A stretch of 63,486 nt of DNA, the filler included, from Pelomyxa schiedti (Eukaryota; Protista; Evosea), in NCBI GenBank assembly GCA_020536535.1. It is 4 parts of 4 records of this genome, joined end to end, with 100 filler letters (N's around TTAATTAATTAA, not from the genome) between each part and the next. Parts side by side here need not be neighbours in the genome. Positions count along the whole stretch, not along the records: positions 1 to 20,187 come from JAHLWZ010000003.1; 3 more parts are not named here. One strand, written 5' to 3'. The notes beneath the pieces were generated by a model. It did no database searches, was not told where the DNA came from, and saw only the letters and a program-made list of their open reading frames with translations. Positions 4,341 through 12,349 of this stretch are shown here, piece by piece (the first letter of the stretch is position 1; each line of letters opens with the position of its first letter). The position numbers and the translations under genes are program-made.

Positions 4341-6575
4341 TCAGTCGATCTTTGGTGGTACCAACACTTGTGGGTTTTGTACAATGGTTTCAGGGATGGG
4401 AGCAATCTCGATTTTCTGCCAATCCACTACAGCCACAACGGTGTCAATGCGTTTAGAAGCATATGCCCGCAGTGCTGCGTCCTCCATCAGTGCCAGAACT
4501 CGCTTTTGTCTGACACATGGGTCTGTACTAGGCATGAGGAAAATCCCCATTGCGCCGCCGACTGCCGCTCCAGCACCTGTGTTTGTTTGTATCGAGATTG
4601 GTTCCTGATTTAATACATACAGAGAATGAGGAGTCCCAAGGGAGCACCGACCACAGATGAAGAGACGATTATTGCCGATGGAGCAGCGAGCAGGGTACCC
4701 AGTGAGGCACCTGTGGCAATTGCAGTGCCAGAGTTCTTGCTGAGCCTGTGAATTTCGTTGATTTCAGATACAAGGTCCTGACAGTAATGCAGGCCATCTC
4801 CTTCAAAGTAGCCTGACTTCAAGTTGAAAGTGGGGGAAACCTGAGGTGTTTGTTAGATGATGATCACTCTGGGCAAGGAAAGTAACTGGATTTTTCAGAG
4901 CATCCAGCAGTCTGTTTGTTTGCTCGGTTGTTTCATGAATATAACCAAAATCGAGACAGGTTGCCACTTTGAATTCTCCAGGGACAGAGGTATGTGTATG
5001 GTCAATTCCAGAATGGCAAAAATCCTGTAATAGACATTTTGTCCCAGTTCCGACTATCACTGCAGCACATGGAGCAAACCTGGCAAGAAAGGAAAGGAGT
5101 AGGTGGACTCTGCCTGAAATGCCAATGTCCTAATGTTTAGTTACACATTGTGACAATGGAGATAGGGAATACATCTTTATCTCGGGGCTTGGTATGCCAG
5201 TATGCAGCCAAAACAAAAGGGAGGGCGTGTTTTGCCTGGTTGCAGTACTTAATGTAGACGTCTTCAGGGCACACACGATTCGGAATGTTCTCTAAGAACA
5301 GTTGTTGAAGCCTGTCCAAAGGTTCGGGAAGGTGATGAAGGAGAGCACCGTATACTTTACACAATGGGACAGGGGGACACTCGGGTACATTGAACTTTGT
5401 GGCATGGTTTCAAAATAGTAAAAATTAGGACAGATTACTCACATGGGCTACCACACAGTCAAATAGCAACATCCACTGGCTTGCTGGTAGTGGAACATAC
5501 TTCTGGGTCAAAATCCCCTTAACACAAAGGTTGGTGGTTGGATTAAATAATAGAATGGTGACCAGAAGTGCACGTATTTTTTCATGAAACCTGTCTGAAG
5601 GAAAATCTGGTACACAAAACGGAATTACTGACGAGAACATCTCGCAGAGTACGGGAACATTAACTGGGTCTTTCTCTTGTACCTGTTCGAGTGTGAAGTT
5701 TTCTCTGGTTACCTTGTTGAAGACAATGATGAGATTGGGCTTTTCATAGCTCTCCTGCGTGGTGGAAATCAAAAATTCAATCCTACCAACTGGGCGATTA
5801 CTTTTGACTCTAAGATTGCAGCATCCTTTATATCTCTAACGAGTGTTTCGTATGTTGTTACATTTGCTGGAGGATCGCGCGTAACATATATGAGAGTAGA
5901 GCTAACAGCATAAGCGATTCTGGGGAACATATTCCAAACAATCTTCCGCTTTACGAATGAGGAATCGGATTTGAGAGCAGGGGTAATACGTCTGTTTTCC
6001 GATCACCTTTTGAGCCCTCAAAATCTAGAAAGATCATGTTGTTACAGCTGAAAAAGTCCACCCCCATGGTTTTTGAAGACCCTTCGTCCCCTACAGCTGG
6101 CCTATATATTCTTAGCTTAGTAGAATAAGTGCACATCTCACTCACAGATAGCGTGAGTTTTCCCACTCCAAGGCATTCAATACTTTTCCAAGAAGAAACG
6201 ATTTCCCCACTTGTGTACTGCCGATAAAAGAGACCACACAAGGTTTTTTGTCGACCTTGTTTCAGTGTTATCCCGAGAGAACGAGAATATCACAACCTGG
6301 TCGCAGGGTAATATATCTGGGTCCACCGAAGTTACCATTTGCCCACGATCCACTCTGAGGATGTGACATTTTCGCCTTTGTGTCTCACTTACCACGCATA
6401 AACTGGAGGCCGTATCATCACGATTCTGAAGGGTAGGTGCATCAGCTTCGATACAGCCAAGACAGTGGGTTTCCACCTGCGCACTGGCCTCGCGGTGTGT
6501 GCAATCTGGGAGACTCGGGAGGGAACAGTCATGTACGACGGGACGTTTGGCCCTCGAAGATGGGTCGTTTCCCAT
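4341..6575 (-). CDS. GBP/atlastin(RHD3)-like large GTPase with C-terminal hydrophobic segments, multi-exon
   Basis: Spliced motifs: G1 CVVSFIGSTQVGKSFLL, G2 SKTMGV, G3 IFLDFEG, and LIIVFNK; hydrophobic ATGASLGTLLAAPSAIIVSSSVVGAPLGLLIL near the C-terminus. Confidence 0.75.
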
Positions 6576-7809
6576 GTGTCAAAATGACCACCAATTAAAA
6601 TTTGAAACTCAGCTACTTGGCCAATGCTTTTCCTGGGTACCAACTTGGTTTTTGGAAATCCGGAATAAGTTGGGGAGCGGCAAACTTGTTTTTTTGGCCG
6701 AATATCATCTGATTTTAATCTGAAAATTGTCAGCATTTAATTACATTTTAATGATTTACTTGGTTGTAGATTAAGTTTACACTGTTTGTATGCATCTCAT
6801 TCACTTGGATTTTATGGGGTGCTGAAGCATCAAACTATTTATTGTTAATAAAACACAATCAAACACAACACAAACTGATCCTTCTTGAAGGCAATATGGA
6901 CATATATATAGATATTTATCAAACCAAGAAAGTAAATAATGATTTGCGTGGCACTATTTATTTGTTGTCAAGTTGAAACAAAAAAAGAAGTGACATCCAC
7001 ACTTTAAAAACTGTGGGTAAGAGAAACATGGGAGGCTATCTTCATTTCCTTTACAATCTATACACCATGCTTTAAGCAGCAGCATAAGTTCCAAACTGGA
7101 GGTGCTTAGTTGTTTTCCCTAAGTAAAAAGTAAGTAAGATCAGACTGTAGAGGAAAAAAAAAAGCCTGCAGGTCTGGCACCTCCAGGGCCAGTCCGGGGC
7201 AGGGCAAGAGGTCCTTAGCTGGCTGGAGCTGGGCTGGAGCCAGGCTGGGCAGGTACATAAAAAGTCTGGAGCATGTAATGAAAAAGTCTGGAGCAGGACT
7301 GGGAGGCCCAAAAAATAAATTGAGGAAAAAAAAATTTCAATGTGAAAGGGGTGGAAACCTGATGGGGTAACACTGTGTGAGTCATTTCCTAGCCATTAAA
7401 TAGACTGTTCTGTTGTTATCTGCTCATTGCTGACACATGTTTGAGTTGTATCCACACTACACTGTGTGAGAACAGAGTACTGTTGGTAGGGGATATTAGG
7501 TCATTGTTCCACTGTCATATGCCCATCACAACATGTTTGAGTTGTGTCCATACAGTCAAATTGTAAGGGGCAGAAAAATGAAATCTGTCCAAATGATAAA
7601 GGGGTATTTACTTCATTAATTAAAGACATACATCATTCTTTGTTGGTGGCACATTTATATGGAGAGTGGGTGCCACTTTAGCACAAAGTTTTTGGTGTTT
7701 AGCTTGACGTGCTAATACCAAACTGCTTACTCTCGCGTGGTACGCAGCTGTTCGATGTTGTGCCTTCTTCATCAACCCACACCGAACGCGTCAATCCCCA
7801 CAAAACGCG

Positions 7810-9285: not shown

Positions 9286-12200
9286 TTACGGCCTCATTTT
9301 CTGTGATAACCAGTCAAGGCCCTCATACAATCCATCACCAGTAAGTGCACAACACCCCTGTATTCTCCAGTTCTTGTGTGACATTGATGGGAGAGATTCG
9401 ACCCCCATCAACTGCGCAACTTCACCAACGGCAAGGCCGCCAGGTAAATCCTGTTTGTTGGCTGTGTATTTATGTGTAGTAATAGTGGAAAAGTGTCAGA
9501 TGACTTGAAGTATACAATATTGTTGGTACCAAACACAAGAACAGGGACGCCGGTTAATGCGTCTTCAGACACTATCTGTTTTTGTTGTCATTAACCAAAT
9601 AAAGGAATGGAGGAAAACTCGCCTTCATAAATTCCTCTCTGGCATCGGGCATTCTAAGACTTACTTACAAATAGAACAGGTGGGGAAATTAAGTACCTTT
9701 CAAGGTCTGAGGAGTCGGCAACAAAAATCAGAGCATTTGTCACTTGGTAATCTATTTCGGTGTTTGGATTTAGAGCGGGCAGATAATGGGGACCGTACAA
9801 TGACGCCACAGTGGTCGAATTTTATCCTCTTATGGTAAGCAGTTAGAATGAGGATTTTAGCATTCAGTGAAATTCATACCACCACCAACATCCTATCATT
9901 GACTGAGAGAGGACTAAAAGAAAAAAGATCATACCCAAACAGTGATAGAAATGTTTTTGTAGGTGACAGTTTCGACATCTTTAATCCCAAATAAGAAGTT
10001 TACAATGACATGCGGCTACATACTGAAGCCAATAGTTGGTATGGTTGTTTCAACTTCCCCAAGTTTGAGTTTATAAAGAATCGTGGTTTTCCCTGGGAGA
10101 GAGTGAAAATGTGTGAATAGCACCAATGATTACCAACAGCATCCAGGCCAAGAATAAGAATCCGTTGTTGCGGAGACCGAAAGAAAAGTGATTTGCCGAT
10201 CCAAGAAAAGGTAGATGACACAATTGAGGAAAAGGTAGAAGTCCCATTCCCTTTAGCAGCAGACCTGACTGTGGTGAGTGTAGGAGAAGCTTGATTGTTG
10301 TAACATACTCATTACCGCTTTCAAAAAATTGCTTTGCAAAAAATTTGTTCTTACCCCAGGCAGTACCGAGTAAGGTCTTCCAATTTCCTGTATAACTGTA
10401 ATTCATACTAAGAAAAATTATGATCAACGTGAAAGGCACTTACCTGTCTGGTGAAAGTCCAGCAAGGCGCATTGATCTTTGTATTCTTGTACTCCAGTTT
10501 TGTTTTATGTACAGCTCTTTCCACAATTCATTATCTGTTGACAAAAGGTAGAGAGCACGGCAAGTCGATGATACGCGGCAAAGACTTTGTACATCCAAAT
10601 AGAGAAATATATCTCTGCATGGTTTTGTAAATCAATGAAGACTGGAGCTGGAAAAGATACTTGAACACAGCTGGGGGAAGGCCACTGAAAGTGCCTGTCA
10701 AACATTAACATGCATATGCTTTTGAATTTACAAGTACCACAGGAAAACTTTGAAGAGGAGAGTGGAGGAATGCTGTGGGTCCCTGTGGTCGAAGAAATAT
10801 GCCCAATGCAACTGCTTGATGCCCAGCCACATGCAATGAAGGTGACTACAACTCCTTCCAGACCCTGCACCCTCTCTGGGATATTTCTATCAGATGTATC
10901 ACCAAGACCTAGATGTAGCTCATCAGAAAAACCTCTTCGTGGAGCGGATATGATACCAAGCTGGCCACATCCGTTGGCCCCAAAACTGAACAAGACGTTT
11001 GCCTTGGTTAGGGCAAGTGAGTGAGCAATGCCGCCTGAGCCTCCTGCTGCCACTTTAACAACGTCCGACTTAAAGTGGGATACGAGGGTGGGTGTGGAGC
11101 GTTTAGTATTGTCACCAAGCCCAAGTTCACCATGCCTAATTCATATATAAGTGAAACTGGCAGATTTGATTTGCGGCCAATACACGTTTGCCCCAAAGGA
11201 AAATAATTGCCCTGCTTCATCAATAACAAGAGAATGTGCATCCCCGCAAGAGAGATCTTTCACTTTGGAGTCACAGAAGAAGTTCACAAATTTTGGTAAT
11301 CTTTCAGAAACCTGGAAAAATAAGTACATTTTCAGATGATGGAAGACTACTTCCTCCCTGTGACCTGAGGAGAATCAATGGAACTCATACTTCAACAACT
11401 GCACTTACCAAGTTGCCCTTGAAGGCCACATCCCCAAGAATACAGGTGTCCAAGAGAATCAATTGCAAGAGAGTGATGGCCTCCAGCACTGGCTTGAACA
11501 ATCCTGACGCCGCTTTCAAAGGTGCATCGAGTGATGTATACCGCTCTGAATGAAGAGATTATATCCCTGAGACTTCACCCCATAAGGTTGTACTTTTCGT
11601 CATAGGAACTAATTCCAAGCTGGCCATGATCATTGATCCCCCATGCATATAACTCCCCATTGGCCTGACACACCAGAACATGACTTCTTCCAGCAGATAC
11701 ACATCTCACACCTGATCCTGTTATTCAGGTCAGGACAAACCCCGTAGGCGTGCTATTTGAACCGAAATACTGGTGTTGAGGTCTACATAAGGAGAAGCTA
11801 GAACCATCAAGTGCCGCTTGTCTGAAAATCCTGTCCTCCACAAAGTTCATTGTCTGTGGCAGTAGGCCAGTTGCACACCAAGTCATATCCTCAGTGCACG
11901 CAACCCTGGCATTCCAATTGAGTTCGAAAAGCTAATACAAGTCACGTGGCACACAAGATACTTCCAGTTGCCATAACAAGTCTCGTTGGAGGAGATGACT
12001 CTGGCCCACCCCAAGTGTATAACTCTCCCTCACATACGGCAGCCATATGCCTAAGTGATGGGAACAAAACCTTGTGAGTCACTCAAAAACCTACTGACGC
12101 TTCGTACGTTGAGCCACATGCCACGGCTGTTAGGCCTCTCAGCCCTGGAACTTCAGCAGGTGTTGTTTGAATATCCTAAACCCAACAAGAAATGCCAGAG

Positions 12201-12349
12201 TCAGGAACCACTCAGCACAATAGGAGGAGGAAAAGAAAAATAAAAAAAAACAAGCAAACTGAAAAAGCAGGCCCTTTGGGAGTATGTTGGTTGTGACCCA
12301 ATTGCTTCGAGTGGGCCTCTCCCCACGTGTACAACTTGCTCTCAGTCAT
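9286..12349 (-). CDS. RCC1-repeat / F-box / Arf GTPase fusion protein, multi-exon
   Basis: RCC1 repeats ([56 protein letters not shown]); F-box [45 protein letters not shown]; Arf [71 protein letters not shown]. Start could lie upstream (~12553). Confidence 0.8.

What the first reader, a model, noticed from the sequence alone, without database searches (positions are those of the whole stretch)
9286..12349. RCC1 - F-box - Arf three-domain fusion: a candidate SCF receptor carrying its own small GTPase
Seen: short introns join RCC1 repeats (~10800-12349), a clear F-box (~10510-10694, [42 protein letters not shown]) and a complete Arf domain (9286-10260). The Arf frame has no ATG of its own, and a ~42-nt intron (GA|gtatgt..cag|G) links it in frame to the upstream exons. 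Known: F-boxes bind Skp1 in SCF ligases, RCC1 propellers can act as GEFs or substrate binders, and animal TRIM23/ARD1 is an unrelated E3-Arf fusion. Inference: this may be a nucleotide- or effector-gated ubiquitin ligase adaptor. I do not know of this architecture being described.
Basis: partly seen in the sequence, partly recalled or inferred. Interest (0 to 1): 0.85.

Follow-up and report, generated by a model that had tools for sequence, protein, structure and literature searches.

The report
Amoeba RCC1–F-box–Arf fusion gene
This real amoeba gene joins a ubiquitin-ligase adaptor to an Arf-type GTP switch; the layout was already listed for other protists in 2021, but the family turns out to be wider than reported and has always lost the residue that lets Arf switch off.

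Summary
The gene is real. A 21–22-intron model on the minus strand (12349–9286) reads RCC1 propeller, F-box, linker and Arf1-like domain without a stop. It matches GenBank KAH3768114.1 of Pelomyxa schiedti (678 aa). No RNA exists here for this locus; the fusion rests on the paralog's shared introns and on transcript-derived and intronless homologs.

The architecture is not new. Vargová et al. 2021 (PMC8358228) name F-box–Arf fusions and list RCC+F-box+Arf proteins in Mastigamoeba, Acanthamoeba and Thecamonas. Pelomyxa has at least 14 copies.

Two points seem unreported. First, all 35 members aligned (Amoebozoa, kinetoplastids, diplonemids) lack Arf Gln71 (Pro 19, Glu 11), against 127 of 140 other Arf domains that keep it. 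GTP-binding and effector residues stay. Second, members share a four-residue insertion in propeller blade 6, and one origin is not rejected by trees (nor shown).

Best reading: an SCF substrate adaptor whose GAP-insensitive, probably GTP-loaded Arf domain binds Arf effectors or GAPs as bait or as a membrane-targeting module. No function is tested.

The parts
10803..12349 (-). RCC1-like seven-bladed beta-propeller (aa 1 to ~364), start ATG at 12349; blades 1-3 divergent
   Evidence: Pfam WD40_RLD E 3.6e-65 and RCC1 E 1.9e-55; AlphaFold model, best Foldseek matches UVR8, RCC1, RPGR and HERC RLDs
11018..11056 (-). Blade-6 loop with the family's four-residue insertion before His-Ser (about aa 294-306)
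   Evidence: 32 of 33 family rows carry it; 4 of 40 other RCC1 domains have extra residues there, of unrelated sequence
10505..10694 (-). F-box (about aa 386-432), split by intron 10660-10615
   Evidence: Pfam F-box-like E 5e-11 and F-box E 4e-7; helical, mostly pLDDT 78-92
10309..10504 (-). Helical linker after the F-box (about aa 433-481), intron 10443-10396
   Evidence: homologous linker and same intron position in paralog KAH3766686.1
10265..10308 (-). 44-nt phase-2 GT-AG intron joining linker to the Arf exon
   Evidence: used in the public model; absent from the paralog, where linker and Arf share one exon
10170..10264 (-). Non-myristoylated, basic and hydrophobic stretch in place of the Arf N-terminal helix (about aa 482-512)
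   Evidence: no Met-Gly start; pLDDT below 50; net positive in 34 of 35 homologs, amphipathicity test inconclusive
9286..10169 (-). Arf1-like GTPase domain (about aa 513-678), 8 introns, stop TAA at 9288-9286
   Evidence: Pfam Arf E 1.3e-64; best solved relative human ARF1, E 3.4e-71; G1-G5 motifs present
9827..9880 (-). Split codon for Glu567, the position of Arf1 Gln71 (G at 9880, AG at 9828-9827, across intron 9879-9829)
   Evidence: no splice choice gives Gln; same Glu in the public model, most paralogs and both Mastigamoeba proteins

Best explanation
One gene encodes a Pelomyxa member of a protist family of (Kelch)-RCC1-F-box-Arf proteins. Shown: the domain order, an intact F-box, intact GTP-binding motifs, conserved Arf effector residues (Phe51, Trp66, Tyr81 equivalents), loss of Gln71 and loss of the myristoylation site. 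From established knowledge: an F-box binds Skp1 and so joins an SCF ligase, and Gln71 is needed for GAP-stimulated hydrolysis. Inferred: the Arf domain sits C-terminal to the F-box, where SCF substrate receptors normally sit. It is GAP-insensitive and mostly GTP-loaded, so it binds Arf effectors or ArfGAPs stably and brings them, or the membranes they mark, to the ligase. The propeller is a second binding surface for substrate, partner or localisation. Output would be set by protein level and partner availability rather than by a fast GTP cycle.
For: Fusion. Fused full-length ORFs come from transcriptome assemblies of Luapelamoeba, Arcella, Copromyxa, Cochliopodium, Flectonema and Apiculatamorpha; intronless genomic copies exist on multi-gene contigs. 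F-box hit in 32 of 35 members; at least four Skp1 loci in the genome. Gln71 absent in 35 of 35 versus present in 127 of 140 other Arf domains. It is also absent in Euglena Arf1h (Arg), Thecamonas ArlX1 (Cys) and Bodo Arf1e (Pro). Switch-region identity is 0.66, against 0.43 for the C-terminal half of the Arf and 0.34 for the propeller. F-box-Arf without RCC1 also exists (P0010, L005, Acanthamoeba Arf1i, Physarum ArlX5), so F-box-Arf is the core unit. Role of Gln71 and of the aromatic triad: PMC6724607.
Against: No biochemical or cellular data exist for any member. The switch regions are conserved in all Arfs and the search words favour them, so their conservation is partly ascertainment. TRIM23 also lacks Gln71 (Lys) yet is reported to hydrolyse GTP after self-ubiquitination (PMC12075517). 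HRAS Q61P hydrolyses slowly but does not transform (PMC6813200), so slow hydrolysis does not prove an active conformation. Domain orientation in the model is unresolved (pTM 0.57).
Confidence: 0.5

Rival explanations
1. Self-regulated switch, as in TRIM23 or RhoBTB: the propeller is the substrate receptor, and the Arf domain gates the ligase. It cycles through an intramolecular GEF or GAP (possibly the propeller) or through self-ubiquitination, without Gln71.
For: RCC1 is the receptor domain in yeast Saf1 and mammalian FBXO24. HERC1 RLDs bind ARF1 and release its GDP (PMC6692442). TRIM23 cycles without Gln71. The propeller carries a family-specific loop.
Against: The propeller lies N-terminal to the F-box, unlike Saf1. 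F-box-Arf proteins occur without any propeller. The model gives no confident propeller-Arf contact.
Confidence: 0.3
2. The protein is a non-proteolytic scaffold or dominant regulator of Arf traffic. The F-box binds Skp1 without forming an active ligase, or is degenerate, and the Arf domain is a pseudo-GTPase that sequesters GEFs, GAPs or effectors.
For: F-box identity across the family is low (0.27); 3 of 35 have no Pfam F-box hit; several Pelomyxa paralogs have decayed G motifs.
Against: The F-box core (Leu-Pro start, terminal Trp invariant) is kept from amoebae to euglenozoans; NKxD and the P-loop are nearly invariant.
Confidence: 0.17
3. The fusion is an annotation artefact: adjacent RCC1/F-box and Arf genes joined by a predicted intron.
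For: No RNA reads for this locus.
Against: No in-frame Arf start. All 19 introns of the closest paralog coincide with this gene's, and the paralog lacks the joining intron. Transcript-derived and intronless homologs are fused. The second allele has no frameshift in exons.
Confidence: 0.03

Closest known systems
Mastigamoeba balamuthi Arf1e and Arf1f ('RCC, F-box-like'; Vargova et al. 2021, PMC8358228, Supp. Table 1)
   Same: Same order RCC1-F-box-Arf, same length class, Glu at position 71, blade-6 insertion; Arf1e is P0151, 33% identical over the full length
   Different: Different species; two copies listed there versus at least 14 in Pelomyxa; the paper does not name a family or mention position 71 in the passages read
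Acanthamoeba Arf1g (XP_004334879.1), Thecamonas ArlX1 (XP_013756981.1), Euglena Arf1h, Bodo Arf1e
   Same: RCC1-F-box-Arf core (Bodo: F-box-Arf, partial), no Gln71; the blade-6 insertion is seen in the first three
   Different: Acanthamoeba and Thecamonas add N-terminal Kelch repeats; residue 71 is Pro, Cys, Arg and Pro; Euglena was listed as 'RCC1' only
TRIM23/ARD1
   Same: Ubiquitin-ligase module fused to a C-terminal Arf1-derived domain that lacks Gln71
   Different: RING-BBox-coiled coil, a ligase in itself; animal-specific; independent fusion
F-box-RCC1 proteins Saf1 (yeast) and FBXO24 (mammals)
   Same: F-box plus RCC1 propeller in SCF
   Different: No GTPase; in Saf1 the F-box precedes the propeller
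RhoBTB-Cul3 adaptors; BTB-Arf of Naegleria and Malawimonas
   Same: Atypical small GTPase fused to a cullin-adaptor domain (references)
   Different: BTB/Cul3 rather than F-box/Cul1; Rho rather than Arf in RhoBTB

Membership tests
RCC-F-box-Arf multidomain ARF proteins (Vargova 2021) | RCC1 repeats, F-box and Arf domain in that order in one ORF | tested here: met
RCC-F-box-Arf multidomain ARF proteins (Vargova 2021) | Full-length homology to the listed Mastigamoeba and Acanthamoeba proteins | tested here: met
   P0151 E 3e-85 over 100%; P0162 E 7e-83
RCC-F-box-Arf multidomain ARF proteins (Vargova 2021) | Single origin across Amoebozoa and Euglenozoa (my extension) | tested here: inconclusive
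   Free trees do not give one clade (4 and 10 changes versus 24 and 29 shuffled). Constrained trees score higher, p-AU 0.87 and 0.61. Shared insertion supports it; a leave-lineage-out profile does not separate euglenozoan members from other RCC1 proteins
F-box proteins (SCF receptors) | F-box motif above Pfam cut-off | tested here: met
   42.6 bits versus cut-off 24.3
F-box proteins (SCF receptors) | Binds Skp1 and Cul1 and directs ubiquitination | not testable with these tools
   Skp1 genes are present; binding untested
Canonical Arf1 | G1-G5 motifs and effector aromatic triad | tested here: met
Canonical Arf1 | Catalytic Gln71 | tested here: not met
   Glu567
Canonical Arf1 | N-terminal myristoylated Gly2 helix | tested here: not met
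   Arf domain is internal, protein starts Met-Thr
RCC1-type GEFs (RCC1, HERC1 RLD1) | Seven-bladed RCC1 propeller | tested here: met
RCC1-type GEFs (RCC1, HERC1 RLD1) | Nucleotide exchange activity | not testable with these tools
   the fold is shared by non-GEFs such as UVR8 and RPGR
TRIM23/ARD1 | RING, B-box and coiled coil | tested here: not met
   no such Pfam hit

The most novel reading that the evidence does not exclude
The scattered RCC1-F-box-Arf entries form one unnamed orthologous family shared by Amoebozoa, Apusomonadida and Euglenozoa. It would be very old (near the eukaryote root) or horizontally spread, and lost from animals, fungi and plants. It would use a hydrolysis-dead Arf as the substrate-binding domain of an SCF ligase that removes Arf effectors or GAPs.
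Probability: 0.3. Interest if true: 0.68.

Novelty: new member of a known kind. Interest (0 to 1): 0.36.

Why it matters
As a single gene it adds little: it is annotated in GenBank and its layout is catalogued. The family view matters more. The 2021 survey called such fusions generally lineage-specific, yet the same layout, blade insertion and loss of Gln71 occur on both sides of the Amorphea-Discoba divide. If they are orthologs, ARF inventories have missed an old paralog linking membrane traffic to SCF ubiquitination. Acanthamoeba, Euglena and Bodo offer tractable copies. A GTP-locked Arf used as ligase bait would be a natural counterpart of engineered degraders that target active-GTPase partners.

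Tried and rejected
1. RNA evidence: only four DNA contig sets of one sample hold the locus; no joints seen.
2. A separate Arf gene: five ATGs between F-box and P-loop, none in the Arf frame.
3. An alternative linker splicing (10443-10388 with 10354-10265) is also in frame, but the paralog's homologous linker favours the public model.
4. Profile search with alignment A1 was swamped by multi-propeller RCC1 proteins and added no member, so the taxon list is a lower bound.
5. ESM Atlas by features and by shape gave no cluster with this architecture.
6. Amphipathic-helix test before the G domain was inconclusive (median p 0.30).
7. The leave-lineage-out RCC1 profile did not support orthology: euglenozoan members 96-142 bits, best non-members up to 160.
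8. Loss of Gln71 alone was rejected as a mark of shared ancestry, since TRIM23, Arl17 and Arl20 lost it too.
9. Paper searches found no study of this family beyond Vargova 2021.
My own joined model was never sent to a search tool: exons were searched by reference, and whole-protein searches used the database's protein P0001.

Full report
Observation. The minus strand from 12349 to 9286 holds one intron-rich gene. I listed splice sites by coordinate and chained exons. With 21-22 introns of median 46 nt (GC 0.39 versus 0.47 in exons) the frame is open from the first ATG to TAA at 9288-9286. All eight variants tried give 650-686 aa without a stop. The joining intron is 10308-10265 (44 nt). The Arf frame has no ATG of its own and is closed by stops just upstream. 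My joined model was used only for this frame check and was not searched.

Identity. The F-box exon, searched by reference, retrieved a 678-aa protein at 100% identity (P0001). It is GenBank KAH3768114.1 of Pelomyxa schiedti, named only 'ADP-ribosylation factor subfamily protein'. It has RCC1 (aa 1-364), F-box (386-431) and Arf (505-675) domains. AlphaFold gives mean pLDDT 83 with a seven-bladed propeller, a helical F-box and linker, a disordered stretch at 477-510 and an Arf fold; pTM 0.57 leaves the domain arrangement open. Foldseek matches are UVR8, RCC1, RPGR, HERC RLDs and ARF1.

Is the fusion real? No RNA run holds the locus. DNA contigs of one sample span it, and the second allele differs by intronic changes, one synonymous change and one Gly-to-Ser change. 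Three other lines support one protein. The closest paralog (KAH3766686.1) has 19 introns, all at positions shared with this gene, and lacks the joining intron, so its linker and Arf share an exon. Complete fused ORFs come from transcriptome assemblies of six other protists. Intronless copies sit on multi-gene contigs.

Prior art. Vargova et al. [quoted passage not shown] The architecture is therefore already described, in the sister lineage of this organism.

Family survey. Searches with P0001 found 14 copies in Pelomyxa and 22 proteins elsewhere. Named sources are Mastigamoeba, Acanthamoeba, Luapelamoeba, Cochliopodium, Arcella, Copromyxa, the kinetoplastid Apiculatamorpha and the diplonemid Flectonema; the rest are environmental. 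All 35 aligned have RCC1 and Arf hits and 32 have an F-box hit. This is a lower bound, because only the top candidates were scored. No animal, fungal or plant member appeared among the listed hits.

Switch II. Position 71 is Glu in this gene under any splice choice. Across 35 members it is Pro 19, Glu 11, Ala 2 and never Gln, while 127 of 140 other Arf domains from the same searches have Gln. The printed Euglena, Thecamonas and Bodo sequences also lack it. P-loop Lys-Thr, Thr48, Asp67-Gly70, NKxD and the Phe51/Trp66/Tyr81 triad are kept in 32-35 of 35. Gln71 is critical for GAP-stimulated hydrolysis, and the triad is the common effector site (PMC6724607). Cautions: TRIM23, Arl17 and Arl20 lost Gln71 independently; TRIM23 still shows GTPase activity (PMC12075517); HRAS Q61P and Q61E hydrolyse about eightfold slower, yet Q61P does not transform (PMC6813200).

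One origin? Members share a short propeller-to-F-box junction and a four-residue insertion in blade 6 (32 of 33, versus 4 of 40 other RCC1 domains with unrelated extra residues), also visible in the Euglena and Thecamonas sequences. Quick trees cluster the family far beyond chance but not as one clade. Trees forced to hold it together have higher likelihood than the free searches (p-AU 0.87 for RCC1, 0.61 for Arf), which means only that one origin is not rejected. Outgroups were whatever the searches returned, and two family RCC1 rows were dropped for short coverage. A profile built from amoebozoan propellers did not rank euglenozoan members above other RCC1 proteins. I put common origin at about 60%, and cannot tell ancient inheritance from transfer.

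Mechanism. Most likely (0.5) the F-box binds Skp1 (at least four loci here) and the GAP-insensitive Arf, in the usual receptor position after the F-box, binds Arf effectors or GAPs for ubiquitination or for targeting. F-box-Arf proteins without a propeller fit this. The main rival (0.3) makes the propeller the receptor, as in Saf1 and FBXO24, with the Arf as a self-regulated gate; HERC1 shows that RLDs can bind ARF1 and release its GDP (PMC6692442). A non-proteolytic scaffold (0.17) and an artefact (0.03) remain. All functional steps are inferred.

Verdict. The architecture is known, so this is a new member of a known kind. The unreported parts are the family-wide loss of Gln71, the wide taxonomic spread and the Pelomyxa expansion. 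Interest 0.36.

Noticed in passing
window:12638-15280 (+): ABCG-type half transporter (ABC_tran then ABC2_membrane pieces) head-to-head with the fusion gene; only 288 nt lie between the two start codons, so a shared promoter is possible.
   Followed up: partly
window:7810-9213 (+): Intronless 467-aa ORF, GC-rich at its start, with no Pfam hit; it ends 72 nt from the Arf stop, tail to tail.
   Followed up: partly
window:15610-~17700 (+) and 1-~800 (+): Ubiquilin/RAD23-like gene (ubiquitin-like, UBA and STI1 hits). Its 5' part recurs at 93-100% identity 15.4 kb upstream at the contig start, next to an N gap: recent duplication or an allele assembled twice.
   Followed up: partly
window:901-1335 and 5951-6736 (-): Two related spliced ORFs without Pfam hits (translations share several short motifs); probably local paralogs.
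   Followed up: no
window:9622-9576 (-): A GC-AG intron in the Arf domain, used in the public model too; a GT-AG alternative four bases on gives a protein of the same length.
   Followed up: partly
L005:141-956: An F-box-Arf gene lies directly upstream of a Kelch-RCC1-F-box-Arf gene in an intronless genome, suggesting the short form arose by partial duplication.
   Followed up: partly
P0070, P0010 (Pelomyxa proteins): Other Arf fusions in this genome: a tandem double Arf with a long C-terminal region, and F-box-Arf without RCC1.
   Followed up: no
Vargova 2021 dataset: Loss of Gln71 recurs in Arf1-derived TRIM23 (Lys), Arl17 (Cys) and Arl20 (Arg); a general trend in Arf1 offshoots worth a systematic count.
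   Followed up: partly
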